DNA of 63,999 nt, filler included, from Octopus bimaculoides (Eukaryota): NCBI RefSeq assembly GCF_001194135.2. It is 9 parts of 8 records of this genome, joined end to end, with 100 filler letters (N's around TTAATTAATTAA, not from the genome) between each part and the next. Parts side by side here need not be neighbours in the genome. Positions count along the whole stretch, not along the records: positions 23,070 to 28,274 come from NC_068999.1; 8 more parts are not named here. One strand, given 5' to 3'. The position numbers and the translations under genes are program-made. This document shows, piece after piece, positions 9,388 through 28,399 of this stretch. Under the pieces are notes generated by a model. It searched no databases and was not told the origin of the DNA. It worked only from the letters and a program-made list of their open reading frames with translations. The first letter of the stretch is position 1; every line of letters starts with the position of its first letter.

Positions 9388-9819
9388 NNNNNNNNNNNNN
9401 NNNNNNNNNNNNNNNNNNNNNNNNNNNNNNNNNNNNNNNNNNNNNNNNNNNNNNNNNNNNNNNNNNNNNNNNNNNNNNNNNNNNNNNNNNNNNNNNNNNN
9501 NNNNNNNNNNNNNNNNNNNNNNNNNNNNNNNNNNNNNNNNNNNNNNNNNNNNNNNNNNNNNNNNNNNNNNNNNNNNNNNNNNNNNNNNNNNNNNNNNNNN
9601 NNNNNNNNNNNNNNNNNNNNNNNNNNNNNNNNNNNNNNNNNNNAGTCAGGAGGGAAAGACAGTGCCCATGACCTGTTACAGAGCCTCTGAAAACTGGTTG
9701 GTAAGATATCATCAAATCGGGAACCCAGCGCGAACGCTTGCAAAAGAGTGAACCTTGCTAAAGGTATACAAGGTATCAGGTGGTGGTGTTAAATGTGACG
9801 ACAGGTTAACTAGGTAGGC

Positions 9820-22969: not shown

Positions 22970-23197
22970 NNNNNNNNNNNNNNNNNNNNNNNNNNNNNNN
23001 NNNNNNNNNNNNNTTAATTAATTAANNNNNNNNNNNNNNNNNNNNNNNNNNNNNNNNNNNNNNNNNNNNCAAAAAACAACAGACGAAGACAGGTGATATT
23101 GAAAACAAATAGATATATTAGTATAACGCTCGGGTATTGAGAAAGTTTTATATGTGTGTGTGTATCTGTAAATAACATGTGACAATTAAATTCGGTA

Positions 23198-23267
23198 GCC
23201 ATGATAAAACTCTGAGTTTCGGATGTTGGGGTGGAAACCCACGCCACCATCTCTTCAGTTATCTGGC
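23198..23267 (-). ncRNA. Type I minimal hammerhead ribozyme motif in a Penelope-like terminal repeat
   Basis: Minus strand reads GCCA GATAA CTGAAGA GATG..CATC C GAAAC TCAGA GTT TTATC A TGGC; a related partial copy lies on + at about 44884-44965. Confidence 0.6.
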
Positions 23268-23283
23268 CTTCGAAAAAATACTA

Positions 23284-24465
23284 TGTAAATGACCGTTAAA
23301 CAAAGGGAAATTACTGTGCGATTGACCGTTATTAAGGCAAAAGAACTATTAGAATGACCGCTAAGTGAGGGGAGGGAGTAAAGGTAAGGGAGTAAAAATG
23401 TCCATAGCATTCGCATAAGTGCACCAGTCCATACATACACATGCGCGCCCGCACACTCACGTACATGCACCTGTAGTGTACCTCTCTCTCTGTTATATAT
23501 ACATGAGTGCAGACATAGTGGTTAACAGCTAGCCTTCGGCCATACGTTTTGACCCTGTTGTGTCCACCACTCTGATTGGTTGGTATTGGCGTATTTTTGT
23601 CTCCTGTTTTATTTCGCGCCAGGGTGCAACCCAACCAATCACAGCCTTCAGATAAGGTCGCGTGGGACAGTCTTTCTGAACCCCTGTTTGACCCTATAGT
23701 ATCTTATAAATAGGTAGCTTTTCACCGTCCCGGTTGTCAGTCAGCTTTAGACCTTCTGAGGTCTAGCCGCTGGCCACAGAACACACAGCTAGTTCCAGCG
23801 ACGACATGAAACAGCTTCATGGAGATCCAACACTTCGTTCAACAGCTTACTGCAAACTCCTTCTTCGTCGCCACCGCCAGCTTCTTAGCGTCTACACCGA
23901 CGTCTCTACGTACACACCACCAACAGCACCCGCACAGGTTCTCTCAACACTGTTTGTGAATTGCTTCACCATGATTAACAGCGAGTACAATCTGCGAGAC
24001 CTCCTGTACCAAGTAACTGGCCGCAGCATCGGAGCTTCAACTTCTCGTGCGACAGTGACTTTTCTCGGCTCTGCCTTGCCGCCACAACTTCTTGTACAGC
24101 ACTTCAACTACTGTGTACCTTGACTATGAACTGGTATTTACCATCCTTGTGTCTGGACTTTCTTCTAATGTCCTTGTAGACTCTTTTCTATGCTTTGTAT
24201 TTCTCGCACACACATAGATCCAAGTTTGTATACACATACACTTTGCATGACGGCCTGTCTATTATTGTGTTTATTATGTCGCACTCACACACACAGACAT
24301 ACAAGTTGACATATCAATAAAACCTTCTACCGGTTGTGTCTCTCTTTTCCTTTTTGGCACTTATACTCAATTAACCTCTTTTCTTGTTTTTTATTTGTAT
24401 CGACCGTGCGATGTGCTAAAAAAAGCCATTCCTCGTCACCATATCCTGGTCACACGGTCGTTACA
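23284..24465 (+). mobile_element. Solo LTR (about 1.18 kb)
   Basis: Inverted termini TGTAAATGACCG / CGGTCGTTACA; CCAAT boxes at 23575 (reverse) and 23635, TATAAATA at 23705, AATAAA at 24316; the TSD is only approximate (TACTA/TACCT). Confidence 0.75.
23575..23712 (+). promoter_or_regulatory. Putative LTR promoter (CCAAT x2 and TATA)
   Basis: ATTGG 23575-23579, CCAAT 23635-23639, TATAAATA 23705-23712; activity not shown. Confidence 0.5.
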
Positions 24466-24632
24466 TACCTATATGCATATACTCATCCACCCTAATTTGA
24501 AACACACGCATGCTCACCCACACATTTGCCAAAAAATATATACATGCCCGCATATACGCTCGCACACAATATATACATACCCGCATACACACGCGGGGAA
24601 AAAAGTTCATACACACGTCTGTATACGCACAT

Positions 24633-25176
24633 GGGATCTTTTTTAAAACGGGGGCCACATTTTTCATTAACGAAACACTTTGAAACTTGGATCACTGGTA
24701 GAATGTGTCATATAAAACATCTTTTTCTCTTAGTCTTCTTAAAAAAAAAAGAAATCCATAAATTATTCCATGTTAAAGTTGTCGTATTTCTGTAATTTCA
24801 ACCAATCACTGACGTCCATTCAGCCGATATACATTAAGTGCCGACTACATAAACAAACGATTCTGAAACAATTAACCCTAACCCTAGGGTTAGGGTTAGG
24901 GTTAAAGCAAATTTAAAATGAAAAAAGCAAATAAAACGAAGAATCGTTTGTTTATGTAGTCGGCACGTAATGTATATCGGCTGAATGGACGTCAGTGATT
25001 GGTTGAAATTATCGAAATAAGACAATTTTTTACATGAAATAAATTCAAATACAAAAATATTTTTCTGTTCTATAACACAAAATAGATAAGTATACGAAGT
25101 TTGGAAGTCTTTCGGTACCAAAAGCACTACGTAAAACATTAATGAAAAATGTGGCCCCCGTTTTAAAAAAGATCCC
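24633..25176. mobile_element. 544-bp foldback MITE with a central telomere-repeat palindrome
   Basis: Perfect 38-bp TIR GGGATCTTTTTTAAAACGGGGGCCACATTTTTCATTAA; flanking direct repeat GCACAT; inner 71-bp inverted arms 24794-24864 / 24940-25010 with 1 mismatch. Confidence 0.8.
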
Positions 25177-25313
25177 GCACATGCACAAGAAAAAACAGGG
25201 CTAAAGGCAAAATACAGAAAAAAAGTGTAAAAAAGCAATAAGNNNNNNNNNNNNNNNNNNNNNNNNNNNNNNNNNNNNNNNNNNNNNNNNNNNNNNNNNN
25301 NNNNNNNNNNNNN

Positions 25314-25672
25314 CTAGGGTTAGGGTTAGGGTTAAAGCAAATTTAAAATGAAAAAAGCAAATAAAACGAAGAATCGTTTGTTTATGTAGTCGGCACGTAA
25401 TGTATATCGGCTGAATGGACGTCAGTGATTGGTTGAAATTATCGAAATAAGACAATTTTTTACATGAAATAAATTCAAATACAAAAATATTTTTCTGTTC
25501 TATAACACAAAATAGATAAGTATACGAAGTTTGGAAGTCTTTCGGTACCAAAAGCACTACGTAAAACATTAATGAAAAATGTGGCCCCCGTTTTAAAAAA
25601 GATCCCGCACATGCACAAGAAAAAACAGGGCTAAAGGCAAAATACAGAAAAAAAGTGTAAAAAAGCAATAAG
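25314..25672. repeat. Copy of 24884-25242 across a 71-N gap (probable assembly overlap)
   Basis: The 359 bp read as identical and both copies end at the gap edges. Confidence 0.8.
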
Positions 25673-26012
25673 GGTAAAACACGTGTGTGCGTATATAGAC
25701 GATAGTTGTTGTTGATAAACAACAGCAGAAATTTTATTCAGCTGAATGCACGTCATTGATTGGTTGAAATCACCGAAATACGACAAATTTAACACGAAAT
25801 AACTTCGTAAATAGAAACTTTTCTCAACAACGCTAAGAGTAACTGATGTTTTATATGACACATTCTACCAGTATACGAAGTTCCAAAGTGTTTAATTAAA
25901 GAAAATTAATTTCTCGATCTGCCGTTGAAAGGGAAAAGATCTAATTGCTCTTTTGGTTAATTCTTATTTTGTAACAATTTAAATAATACTTTCATTTTCG
26001 ACATTTTTTTTT

Positions 26013-26555
26013 ATATGACTTGACGAATTCAAAACATCAGTTCGGTTGTTTCCGTGAAAAGCTTAAAAGCACATGGTCAACTGTCATGAAATGGGAGGAG
26101 GAGAAGAAAGCCAATGAGTTGTACGTGCGTGCGTACTTGTTCCTCTGTGAGTGTGTGTGTGCGTGCTTGTTCTTGTCTGTGTAAGGCTTTTTTTCTTCTT
26201 CAAGTTTAAAATGCGTGCTTGTTCTTGTGTGTGTGTCTGTCTGTCTGTTCTGTTTTTATGTATTTGTGTGTTGTGGAATATAGATATAACGAAATTATGC
26301 CAGCAATGTCGCATTTTAAACTTGAAGAAAAAAAGCCTTACACAGACAAGAACAAGCACGCACGCACACACACACTCACACACACACACACAGAGGAACA
26401 AGCACGCACACACACACACACAGAGGAACAGGCACCCACGCACGTACAACCCATTAGTTTTCTTCTCCTCCTCCCATTTCATGACAGTTGGCCACGTGCT
26501 TTTAAGCTTTTCGCGGAAACAGCCGAATTGATGTTTTGAATTCGCTGAGTTATAT
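26013..26555. mobile_element. Palindromic MITE-like element with arms of about 200 bp
   Basis: CGAATTCAAAACATCAGTTCGGTTGTTTCCG.. is mirrored by ..CGGAAACAGCCGAATTGATGTTTTGAATTCG; the inner CTTCAAGTTTAAAATGCG block is also mirrored; no clear TSD. Confidence 0.75.
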
Positions 26556-26872
26556 CGAAGGAATGCCGGACTTAATGAGGTTTTACATAATGGCTCCGTA
26601 ATATGAAACAAACATTTTCATGAAAATTATTTCACGCAAGTTCTCAAATAGTTTTTCTGGTTTTGAAGGTGAGATTTGAGGGCAGTCGTAGCTAGGCGAC
26701 AGAGACTACTGTTTCAGTTATCAAACCCGGAACTAAATTCAAATCATCTCATTGCTACATTGACTAACATGGATGACGTACCTGCAAAAAGGAAAAACTG
26801 AATGACAGTACAGGCGATCACTTCGATCGACCAACTGAGGTCGAACTATTGAAATGGTTCGAAAGATATGAT

Positions 26873-27619
26873 ATGACACATAAAAAGCGAGGTATCGCCT
26901 ACATCTTCAACATTGAAAATTTCAGTGACTCGGAACTTAAAATTTGTCATGGAATATCAAAAGACGCACAAGATTTTAAAAGTGCGTTAAGAAGTCTTGG
27001 ATTTTGTGAAGAAGATATCCATGTTCATACAGATTCAAGAACCGAAGAAATGAAGGAGATTTTGCAAAGCTTTGGCGAGGAAAATCTTGATGTTGGTATT
27101 GATTGCTTTATTTGTGCAATACTGAGTTGTGGTAACTCAGACGGTCTTATCTATGGATACGACGATGCAATTGAACTAGAGAAATTACTTTCTTATCTGA
27201 AACCCGATCGTTGTCCATGTTTAAAAGGAATACCTAAATTATTCTTTGTTCAAGCATGTCGAGGAAGTAAGATTGATTCTGGGATCGAAAAAAATGATGC
27301 TGATTCCAATGGATTTGAAAAAACGTCACCCAAAATTCCAGTTATGGCAGATATTTTGGTTGCTTATTCATCGTGTAATGAATATCCTTCTTTTGGAAGT
27401 AAAGAAAGAGGCTCGTGGTTTATGCAAGCTCTAAGTGACATTTTAATGAAATATGGCAATAAACATGAAATCATGACACTTTTAACCGCTGTCTCTAACT
27501 ATGTTGCCTCTTTTGATTTCCAAAGTTCGGATAATTCAGTATACAATGGCTGTAAACAAATGCCTCACATTACGTCGACATTGACCAAACAACTGAAATT
27601 TTTGAACCGGGATCCTTAA
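26873..27619 (+). CDS. Intronless caspase-3/7-like (peptidase C14A) protein, 248 aa, predicted catalytically inactive
   Basis: YDM.HKKRGIAYIFN, CFICAILSCG, PKLFFVQACRG, IP..ADILVAYS, GSWFMQAL, CKQMP and STLTKQL occur in canonical order with no stops. The first in-frame ATG is at 26873 and the frame is open back to 26777. Confidence 0.9.
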   Translation: MTHKKRGIAYIFNIENFSDSELKICHGISKDAQDFKSALRSLGFCEEDIHVHTDSRTEEMKEILQSFGEENLDVGIDCFICAILSCGNSDGLIYGYDDAIELEKLLSYLKPDRCPCLKGIPKLFFVQACRGSKIDSGIEKNDADSNGFEKTSPKIPVMADILVAYSSCNEYPSFGSKERGSWFMQALSDILMKYGNKHEIMTLLTAVSNYVASFDFQSSDNSVYNGCKQMPHITSTLTKQLKFLNRDP

Positions 27620-28399
27620 ATAGAAACGGAGCTTCTTACAGTGAGAATTTCTGATGCACGCACACATACGAAAAAGATATATTCTAGAAACTCATGTCCG
27701 CAAGAAATAGAAATGGAGCATATTTTAGGAACTTATATATATTCAAATACAAACACTATTTTTACATATAATACCTGCAATATAAATTGTTAAATAGGTA
27801 AATGTAATATTTTCAATAATTGCTAATATGATTACAGAATTAATTTGATTTTATAAATATCATCTAACTTTTTAAGACGTTTAACTAAAACTTTTTTCTA
27901 CCATAAATTTCAATAAGAACACAAGTGCCTTACGTGTACACTCTAAATCTCAAAATAATTCTTCACTCTGAAAATTCAACTAACATTGTTTGGCGAACCT
28001 GACGCACTGTCACCCCTACTTCCGAAACCTACCTTTCCGACTTTTTTCCCCCACCGGATTCCTATGTTTTTGATGACAGAGATTCCGAATATGAAAAAAA
28101 AAAAGAAAAAAAACGTTTTCAAAATTTTTAATTCCCTACCAATTTTAATTTTTAACTTTCTTCGAATTTTTTTTTTTTTTTTTTTTCAATCTACGTGGAA
28201 AAATACGGAGATTAAGATTATGCAAAGTTTCAAACTGTTTAGTTAAAAAAAATAATTAAAAAATCTGTGATTGANNNNNNNNNNNNNNNNNNNNNNNNNN
28301 NNNNNNNNNNNNNNNNNNTTAATTAATTAANNNNNNNNNNNNNNNNNNNNNNNNNNNNNNNNNNNNNNNNNNNNATTATTATTATTATCATTATTATTT

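What the first reader, a model, noticed from the sequence alone, without database searches (positions are those of the whole stretch)
26873..27619. Executioner-type pseudo-caspase: catalytic His and both S1 arginines replaced in an intact intronless ORF
Compared by eye with caspase-3, SHG (catalytic His121) is SCG (codon 27128-27130), RSGT (S1 Arg64) is CHGI (26945-26947), and SWRN (S1 Arg207) is SFGS (27395-27397). The nucleophile QACRG (Cys codon 27257-27259), GSWF, PKLFF, ADILVAYS, KQMP, STLTK and a linker Asp site (NDADS) are retained over 248 stop-free codons. Loss of exactly the catalytic and Asp-recognition residues with the fold and dimer-interface strand preserved resembles decoy regulators such as cFLIP or C. 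elegans CSP-2/CSP-3. Here the scaffold is caspase-3/7-like with no DED or CARD. It may be an uncharacterised dominant-negative, allosteric partner or IAP sponge.
Basis: partly seen in the sequence, partly recalled or inferred. Interest (0 to 1): 0.85.

Follow-up and report, generated by a model that had tools for sequence, protein, structure and literature searches.

The report
Octopus dead executioner-caspase paralogue
This Octopus bimaculoides gene encodes a caspase-3/7-like protein that has lost its catalytic histidine and both aspartate-binding arginines, a loss shared with two other octopus species, so it is probably a non-enzymatic caspase look-alike rather than simple junk, but it evolves very fast and its start region is damaged in this species.

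Summary
ORF 26873-27619 (+) is a full-length Peptidase_C14 domain (E=3e-49), closest to Sf-caspase-1 and caspase-7/-3. Arg64->Cys, His121->Cys and Arg207->Gly sit at the stated codons, and QACRG is kept. The window is O. bimaculoides chromosome CM046619.1. The gene is the first member of a tandem array of octopus-specific effector-caspase genes whose coding regions are single exons. Syntenic orthologues in O. vulgaris and O. sinensis share the losses (Arg64->Cys; His->Cys or Tyr; Arg207->Glu or Gly), so the inactivation predates the species split.

Selection evidence is mixed. dN/dS is about 1.1, against about 0.45-0.6 for two neighbouring paralogues, and differences are spread evenly over codon positions. 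Yet the 245-codon domain has no stop or indel in any species. Replacements also avoid family-conserved residues (7/97 vs 63/148, p=4e-10), in both lineages.

"Intact" needs qualifying. In O. bimaculoides the ancestral N-terminus (about 35 codons) is cut off by a 1-nt deletion and the family start ATG is now TTG.

"Intronless" is normal for octopus effector caspases and is not a retrogene mark.

The gene model already exists in public databases, and similar dead caspases are noted in oysters.

Verdict: a new member of a known kind, of moderate interest.

The parts
26873..27619 (+). Caspase-domain ORF (p20 + linker + p10), 248 codons plus stop; the annotated protein P0001
   Evidence: Pfam PF00656 E=3e-49. 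Identical to a gene call on O. bimaculoides CM046619.1 at 21769765-21770511.
26777..26872 (+). Remnant of the ancestral N-terminal peptide. It is in frame with the main ORF (…KKEKLNDSTGDHFDRPTEVELLKWFERYD) but has no start codon of its own.
   Evidence: It aligns with residues about 8-35 of the O. vulgaris and O. sinensis orthologues.
26769..26801 (+). Ancestral second ATG, now heading a 10-codon dead-end reading frame (MDDVPAKRKN*). A 1-nt deletion lies between 26793 and 26794 (GGAGAAAAC in the orthologues, GGA-AAAAC here).
26760..26762 (+). The family-conserved first start codon (ATG in A orthologues and in paralogues B and C) reads TTG here.
26945..26947 (+). Cys codon at the S1-pocket Arg64 position. 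It is Cys in all three species.
27128..27130 (+). Cys codon at the catalytic His121 position. It is Cys in O. vulgaris and Tyr in O. sinensis.
27251..27265 (+). QACRG pentapeptide with the nucleophile Cys (27257-27259) retained.
27284..27343 (+). Intersubunit linker (residues 138-157), containing IEKND/ADS. It is predicted disordered.
   Evidence: pLDDT below 50.
27395..27397 (+). Gly codon at the S1-pocket Arg207 position. It is Glu in O. vulgaris and Gly in O. sinensis.
27554..27601 (+). C-terminal strand KQMPHITSTLTKQLKF, equivalent to the caspase-3/7 dimer-interface strand. 15 of 16 residues match O. vulgaris and all 16 match O. sinensis, with A-specific changes relative to the family consensus.
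   Evidence: Its role as the interface strand rests on established caspase-3/7 structures and was not tested here.

Best explanation
The gene is a catalytically dead executioner-caspase paralogue (a pseudo-caspase). It arose by tandem duplication inside an octopus-specific, fast-evolving array of caspase-3/7-like genes.

It lost the general-base His and both P1-Asp-binding arginines before O. bimaculoides split from O. vulgaris/O. sinensis. It has since been kept as an open reading frame with its fold-determining residues under constraint, while its surface and former substrate-binding loops change freely.

Shown: the fold, the residue losses, the shared ancestry of those losses, the tandem context, ORF maintenance and site-specific constraint.

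Inferred: it cannot cleave after Asp and acts through protein-protein contacts. The most likely mode is as a dimer partner of active array members, or as a cleavable decoy for them, in the manner of cFLIP-L with caspase-8 or mosquito CASPS18 with CASPS19.

In O. bimaculoides the protein, if made, starts at the conserved Met36 and lacks the short prodomain.
For: - Full-length Peptidase_C14 match. AF2 model with pLDDT 82.8 and pTM 0.83, with TM 0.84-0.92 to caspase-7, caspase-3 and Sf-caspase-1.
- His121, Arg64 and Arg207 are replaced in O. bimaculoides, O. vulgaris and O. sinensis. All 16 other octopus paralogues examined keep His121 and Arg64.
- Orthology rests on flank alignment and on a conserved A-then-B gene order in all three species.
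- There is no stop and no indel across 245 aligned codons. Neutral simulation gives P(no stop)=0.023 for the 103 observed substitutions. The flank indel rate of about 0.009 per bp predicts about 7 indels in 735 bp.
- Amino-acid differences avoid residues that are at least 90% conserved among paralogues: 7/97 vs 63/148, Fisher p=4e-10.
- The same avoidance holds in codons 1-150, where there is no conversion signal (p=3e-5), with equal silent-change rates in both classes.
- It also holds in each lineage separately: O. bimaculoides p=0.016, O. vulgaris p=0.004.
- The former active-site positions themselves vary between species (His site C/C/Y; next residue G/S/S; Arg207 site G/E/G), as expected if catalysis is gone.
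- RefSeq models two isoforms for the O. sinensis orthologue, one of them spliced.
- The neighbouring paralogue B is listed among the proteins of the O. vulgaris skin-mucus proteome.
Against: - dN/dS = 1.13-1.17 (bootstrap CI 0.66-2.1), against 0.48-0.62 for paralogue B and 0.44 for paralogue C.
- Differences fall 34/33/36 over codon positions 1/2/3, as for unconstrained DNA.
- Coding divergence (about 14%) is no lower than in the noncoding flanks (8-15%).
- In O. bimaculoides the family start ATG is lost and a 1-nt deletion cuts off the N-terminus. This leaves three upstream ATGs before Met 26873.
- No transcript or peptide evidence for this gene was found. Its accessions are absent from the stored parts of the mucus proteome tables, and no RNA-derived contig carries the exact protein.
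- Gene conversion within the array could mimic part of the site heterogeneity. The C-terminal third is closer to the O. bimaculoides B gene (91-93%) than to the O. vulgaris orthologue (84-87%).
- Partner binding was not tested.
Confidence: 0.55

Rival explanations
1. The gene is a decaying or very recently dead pseudogene, at least in O. bimaculoides. After the active site was lost, constraint relaxed and the copy drifts. The open frame and conserved core are leftovers, helped by occasional gene conversion from functional neighbours.
For: - dN/dS is about 1.1 and changes are evenly spread over codon positions.
- The coding region diverges as fast as the flanks.
- The start ATG is lost and a frameshifting 1-nt deletion lies at the 5' end in O. 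bimaculoides.
- There are signs of exchange with paralogue B in the C-terminal third.
- No expression evidence was found.
Against: - The domain is open and free of indels in three species, with a joint chance of roughly 1e-4 to 1e-5 under flank-calibrated neutrality.
- Replacements strongly avoid conserved residues, even where no conversion is detectable, and in both lineages.
- Conversion would have restored His and Arg64, yet no species has them back.
- The O. vulgaris and O. sinensis copies are full length.
Confidence: 0.3
2. The gene encodes a re-tooled active enzyme. The retained Cys nucleophile works with a different base and a rebuilt, non-Asp S1 pocket. Alternatively, the three cysteines now at the old active site (positions 25, 86 and 129) form a redox- or metal-sensing site.
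For: QACRG is strictly kept in all three species. The A lineage gained cysteines at the Arg64 and His121 positions and one more at Ser116.
Against: The replacing residues are not conserved between closely related species (C/C/Y at the His site, G/E/G at the Arg207 site, G/S/S next to the His site), so there is no consistent new catalytic set. No known caspase works without the His.
Confidence: 0.07
3. The residue changes or the frameshift are assembly or sequencing errors in an otherwise ordinary active caspase.
For: The window contains an assembly gap with an exactly duplicated 300-nt flank 1.3 kb upstream. Both public O. bimaculoides records derive from the same contigs.
Against: The three residue changes recur in two independently sequenced species. 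The deleted base is not in a simple homopolymer.
Confidence: 0.03

Closest known systems
Executioner caspases of family C14A (human caspase-7/-3, Spodoptera Sf-caspase-1)
   Same: Same fold and domain order: short prodomain, p20, linker, p10. Sequence identity is 37-40%. QACRG, GSWF and the C-terminal interface strand are present.
   Different: It lacks the catalytic His and both S1 arginines, so by established caspase chemistry it should not cleave after Asp.
Bivalve executioner-caspase expansions with lost catalytic residues (Crassostrea gigas Cg3A with His->Tyr; the Cg3/7-like A-H cluster), Vogeler et al. 2021, PMC7836458
   Same: A lineage-specific, tandemly clustered mollusc caspase-3/7 expansion in which some copies have lost His and/or Cys. 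That paper also proposes loss of catalytic function from sequence alone.
   Different: This is a different mollusc class and an independent expansion. Here the p10 is kept, and the loss is shown to be shared by three species with site-specific constraint.
Aedes aegypti CASPS18, a decoy caspase paired with CASPS19
   Same: A catalytically inactive effector-caspase paralogue. As summarised in PMC4840389, casps18 shares expression profiles with casps19 and is considered a decoy caspase that enhances casps19.
   Different: This is an insect Decay-type lineage, and its function was tested experimentally. Nothing has been tested for the octopus gene.
cFLIP-L (PMC7586951) and C. elegans CSP-2/CSP-3 (PMC3591282)
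   Same: Caspase-like proteins without catalytic activity, reported to regulate an active caspase by pairing with it.
   Different: cFLIP-L carries two DEDs and belongs to the initiator lineage. [quoted passage not shown] The reported anti-apoptotic phenotype of csp-3 was not reproduced in PMC3591282. The octopus protein has a complete effector-type p20/p10 and no recruitment domain.

Membership tests
Peptidase C14A caspase domain (Pfam PF00656), executioner type | Full-length p20/p10 caspase fold | tested here: met
   Pfam E=3e-49 over profile positions 1-232 of 233. AF2 model with TM 0.84-0.92 to caspase-7, caspase-3 and Sf-caspase-1.
Peptidase C14A caspase domain (Pfam PF00656), executioner type | Catalytic dyad His121 + Cys163 | tested here: not met
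   Cys163 is present in QACRG. His121 is Cys here, Cys in O. vulgaris and Tyr in O. sinensis.
Peptidase C14A caspase domain (Pfam PF00656), executioner type | S1 pocket Arg64 / Gln161 / Arg207 for the P1 Asp | tested here: not met
   Arg64->Cys and Arg207->Gly. Gln161 is kept.
Peptidase C14A caspase domain (Pfam PF00656), executioner type | Short prodomain with no CARD, DED or DD | tested here: met
   Peptidase_C14 is the only Pfam domain found. Orthologues have only about 35-38 residues before the domain.
Peptidase C14A caspase domain (Pfam PF00656), executioner type | Activating Asp site in the intersubunit linker | tested here: inconclusive
   IEKND/A is present in a disordered linker, but it is offset by one residue from the caspase-7 IQAD site. 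Cleavage was not testable.
Functional pseudo-caspase / decoy caspase (cFLIP-L, CASPS18, CSP-2/3 kind) | Caspase fold with catalytic residues missing | tested here: met
Functional pseudo-caspase / decoy caspase (cFLIP-L, CASPS18, CSP-2/3 kind) | Retained by selection across species | tested here: inconclusive
   For: the ORF is open in three species, there are no indels, and replacements avoid conserved sites (p=4e-10). Against: omega is about 1.1, changes are uniform over codon positions, and the 5' end is frameshifted in O. bimaculoides.
Functional pseudo-caspase / decoy caspase (cFLIP-L, CASPS18, CSP-2/3 kind) | Binds and modulates an active caspase partner | not testable with these tools
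   Only single-chain structure prediction was available. The interface strand is conserved among the A orthologues, which is suggestive only.
Functional pseudo-caspase / decoy caspase (cFLIP-L, CASPS18, CSP-2/3 kind) | Expressed as RNA and protein | tested here: inconclusive
   RefSeq isoform models exist for the O. sinensis orthologue. Neighbour B is in the mucus proteome, but the A accessions were not found there, and those files were truncated in storage.
Processed (retroposed) pseudogene | Intronless copy of an intron-containing parent gene, dispersed from it | tested here: not met
   All array members and a canonical octopus caspase-3-like gene have single-exon coding regions. The gene sits in a tandem array 13 kb from paralogue B.
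Processed (retroposed) pseudogene | Neutral evolution with disabling mutations | tested here: inconclusive
   Omega is about 1 and the 5' end is frameshifted. However, the domain itself carries no disabling mutation and shows site-specific constraint.

The most novel reading that the evidence does not exclude
The first two genes of the array are complementary dead caspases conserved in three octopus species. Gene A keeps the Cys but lacks the His and the S1 arginines. Gene B, 13 kb downstream, keeps the His and Arg64 but has Cys->Ser and has lost Arg207.

Together with the active members they could form a fast-evolving heterodimer system that tunes, or acts as a decoy for, effector-caspase activity at mucosal surfaces. 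The high replacement rate would then reflect a host-pathogen arms race, for example bait for pathogen caspase inhibitors.
Probability: 0.15. Interest if true: 0.7.

Novelty: new member of a known kind. Interest (0 to 1): 0.4.

Why it matters
Pseudo-caspases with a tested role are few: cFLIP-L, CASPS18 and CSP-2/3. Mollusc caspase expansions contain many untested candidates. This locus offers a compact case. It is a tandem array with active members and two differently disabled members, conserved over three species. In such an array, heterodimer regulation of effector caspases could be tested directly.

It also shows that a whole-gene dN/dS near 1 can coexist with clear site-specific constraint. 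For genome annotation, the automatic names ('caspase-1-like', 'caspase-7') hide the fact that the protein cannot be a working caspase. The O. bimaculoides model is also N-terminally truncated by a frameshift.

Tried and rejected
- **Retrogene idea:** rejected. Single-exon coding regions are the rule for octopus effector caspases, including the canonical caspase-3-like gene.
- **Pure neutral pseudogene:** weakened by the ORF and indel simulation and by the site-avoidance tests.
- **Positive selection on variable sites:** not demonstrable. Omega in the variable class is 1.2-1.3, with CIs spanning 1.
- **Recent gene conversion as the full explanation of the heterogeneity:** rejected for codons 1-150. 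It remains possible for the C-terminal third.
- **O. sinensis B protein P0008:** the look-up failed because the exact product is not on record. P0080 and L006 were used instead.
- **Bacterial-type promoter and terminator scan:** uninformative for an animal gene.
- **Other features in the piece:** Rfam, tRNA and Pfam scans of the other ORFs found nothing.
- **Literature:** searches for an octopus or cephalopod pseudo-caspase, and for the orthologues' accession numbers, found no paper.
- **Not run:** the representative-library HMMER search, because 50% clustering would collapse this family.

Full report
**1. What is in the sequence**

The piece 23070-28274 is identical to O. bimaculoides chromosome CM046619.1 (GCA_001194135.2) around 21.77 Mb. 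ORF 26873-27619 (+) encodes 248 residues. It matches Pfam Peptidase_C14 end to end (E=3e-49). Among solved structures it is most similar to Spodoptera Sf-caspase-1, human caspase-7 and caspase-3 (E=1e-47 to 1e-40). An AlphaFold2 model has mean pLDDT 82.8 and pTM 0.83, with only the intersubunit linker (residues 138-157) disordered. It superposes on caspase-7, caspase-3 and Sf-caspase-1 with TM 0.84-0.92.

- Arg64->Cys at 26945-26947.
- His121->Cys at 27128-27130.
- Arg207->Gly at 27395-27397.
- QACRG, with its nucleophile Cys at 27257-27259, is retained.

**2.

The ORF is not the complete ancestral gene. Paralogues and orthologues begin about 35-38 codons upstream (MT..DA…). In the window that segment is recognisable but broken:
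- The family start ATG reads TTG (26760-26762).
- The next ATG (26769) opens MDDVPAKRKN*.
- A 1-nt deletion after 26793 (GGAGAAAAC in both O. vulgaris and O. sinensis) shifts the rest of the N-terminal peptide into the frame of the main ORF.
- Three upstream ATGs therefore precede Met 26873.

The deleted base is not in a simple homopolymer, so I take it as probably real. The two public O. bimaculoides records are not independent assemblies.

'Intronless' is not a sign of retroposition. The coding regions of the orthologues, of array members B and C, and of a canonical octopus caspase-3-like gene on another chromosome are all single exons.

**3. Genomic and evolutionary context**

A protein search found an octopus-specific clade of about 17 effector-caspase clusters at 55-72% identity. 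This is well separated from the canonical octopus caspase-3-like proteins (about 40% identity). On the O. bimaculoides chromosome the gene (A) is followed after 13 kb by paralogue B (P0003) and, 38 kb after B, by C (P0005), all on the same strand.

The closest relatives of A are O. vulgaris CAI9736557.1 (281 aa) and O. sinensis XP_029648416.1 (283 aa, plus a spliced isoform X2). Flank alignment and the conserved A-then-B order show that these are orthologues.

The orthologues share the losses:

| Position | O. bimaculoides | O. vulgaris | O. sinensis |
|---|---|---|---|
| Arg64 | Cys | Cys | Cys |
| His121 | Cys | Cys | Tyr |
| Arg207 | Gly | Glu | Gly |

None of the 16 other paralogues examined has lost His121 or Arg64. 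The inactivation is therefore old relative to the species split and is not a sequencing artefact.

**4. Is it under selection?**

The signals conflict.

Pointing to relaxation:
- Nei-Gojobori dN/dS between O. bimaculoides and O. vulgaris or O. sinensis is 1.13-1.17 (bootstrap CI 0.66-2.1). For paralogue B it is 0.48-0.62, and for the catalytically intact paralogue C it is 0.44.
- The 103 nucleotide differences fall 34/33/36 on codon positions 1/2/3.
- Coding divergence (about 14%) equals that of the colinear noncoding flanks (8-15%).

Pointing to retention:
- None of the three species has a stop or an indel in the 245 aligned codons.
- Random placement of 103 substitutions leaves the frame open in only 2.3% of simulations.
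- The flank gap rate (23 openings in 2,439 aligned bp) predicts about 7 indels in 735 bp.
- Amino-acid differences strongly avoid residues that are at least 90% conserved among the 16 paralogues: 7 of 97 against 63 of 148 (Fisher p=4e-10).

Gene conversion in a tandem array could mimic this last pattern. There is a hint of exchange with B in the C-terminal third, where A of O. bimaculoides is 91-93% identical to its own B but 84-87% identical to O. vulgaris A. However, the avoidance persists in codons 1-150, where A is clearly distinct from all paralogues (6/61 vs 36/89, p=3e-5). Silent changes there are equally frequent in both site classes. Conversion has also never restored His or Arg64.

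Polarising changes with the paralogue consensus gives equal numbers on each lineage (24 and 24), and both lineages avoid conserved sites (O. bimaculoides p=0.016, O. vulgaris p=0.004).

My reading is that the fold core has stayed under purifying selection since the active site was lost, while the surface and the former substrate loops are free or diversifying. A very recent death of the O. bimaculoides copy cannot be excluded.

**5. Mechanism**

By established caspase chemistry, peptide-bond hydrolysis needs the His121/Cys163 dyad. P1-Asp recognition needs Arg64 and Arg207. All but the Cys are gone. The replacing residues differ among close species. This argues against a re-tooled active site and for loss of catalysis.

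What is conserved among the A orthologues:
- The core.
- QACRG.
- The linker Asp motif (IEKND/A or VEQND/V).
- The C-terminal strand that forms the dimer interface in caspase-3/7: KQMPHITSTLTKQLKF, 15-16 of 16 residues identical, with A-specific residues.

The most likely mode of action is therefore non-catalytic. It would pair with active array members, or be cleaved by them as a competing substrate, and so change their activity. This step is inference and nothing here tests binding.

Expression evidence is indirect. RefSeq models two isoforms in O. sinensis. The O. vulgaris skin-mucus proteome lists 13 Peptidase_C14 proteins, including A0A7E6FHF5, the B neighbour. The A accessions were not found in the stored parts of those tables.

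**6. Comparison with what is known**

It works like a pseudo-caspase:
- cFLIP-L (PMC7586951).
- C. elegans CSP-2/CSP-3 (PMC3591282).
- Most closely, the mosquito effector-type decoy CASPS18, which shares expression profiles with, and is considered an enhancer of, its partner CASPS19 (PMC4840389).

It has no DED or CARD, so it is not a cFLIP homologue. It also has a complete p20/p10, and CSP-3 is described only as lacking a caspase active site.

The nearest precedent in kind is the oyster executioner-caspase expansion, where His->Tyr and His/Cys-less copies in tandem clusters were noted and suggested to be inactive (PMC7836458). I found no paper describing this in cephalopods. The exact 248-aa protein is already a public gene model in NCBI, UniRef and EukProt.

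**7. Verdict**

The gene is a new member of a known kind: a lineage-specific dead effector caspase. Interest is moderate, raised somewhat by the pairing with a differently disabled neighbour in a fast-evolving array. It is lowered by dN/dS near 1, the damaged 5' end in this species and the absence of expression or binding data.

Noticed in passing
L003:10001-10846 (O. bimaculoides CM046619.1, 13 kb downstream of the window gene); orthologues at L007:10001-10831 and L006:25345-26184: The next gene in the array (P0003, annotated 'caspase-7') is a second, differently disabled caspase. It has QASRG (nucleophile Cys->Ser) and Arg207->Gly or Ile, but keeps His121 and Arg64. The changes are conserved in O. 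vulgaris and O. sinensis, with dN/dS of about 0.5-0.6. Its O. sinensis form (A0A7E6FHF5) is listed in an O. vulgaris skin-mucus proteome. Another orthogroup (P0013/P0010) also has EASRG.
   Followed up: partly
window 25243-25313 with 24884-25183 and 25314-25613: A run of N (an assembly gap) is flanked by an exact 300-nt direct duplication. This is most likely an assembly artefact at the gap rather than real biology.
   Followed up: partly
window 24661-25029, centre about 24870-24905: A large foldback: 90-nt arms at 24775-24864 / 24940-25029 (94% complementary), with outer 87-nt arms at 24661-24747 whose partner lies at 25819-25905 beyond the assembly gap. The centre is a head-to-head telomere-like repeat (CCCTAA)n/(TTAGGG)n. 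It may be a foldback or MITE-like element. No Rfam or Pfam hit.
   Followed up: no
window 26013-26555: An inverted repeat with 170-nt arms (89% complementary) and a (GT)n/(CA)n-rich core lies about 320 bp upstream of the caspase ORF. The O. vulgaris locus aligns to both arms with a single segment (L002 about 9632-9786), so the hairpin may be specific to O. bimaculoides.
   Followed up: partly
L005:10001-10777 (O. sinensis P0016, orthologue of active paralogue C): The O. sinensis model is 258 aa and diverges from the family after about residue 239 (…LTAVLTWLPLETS…). This suggests a frameshift or assembly error near the 3' end of that gene.
   Followed up: no
Whole octopus-specific caspase clade (P0002-P0018): Orthologue pairs between O. 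bimaculoides and O. sinensis/O. vulgaris are only 77-85% identical in protein, with omega about 0.45-0.6 even for catalytically intact members. The whole array is fast-evolving, which may point to an immune or mucosal role.
   Followed up: partly
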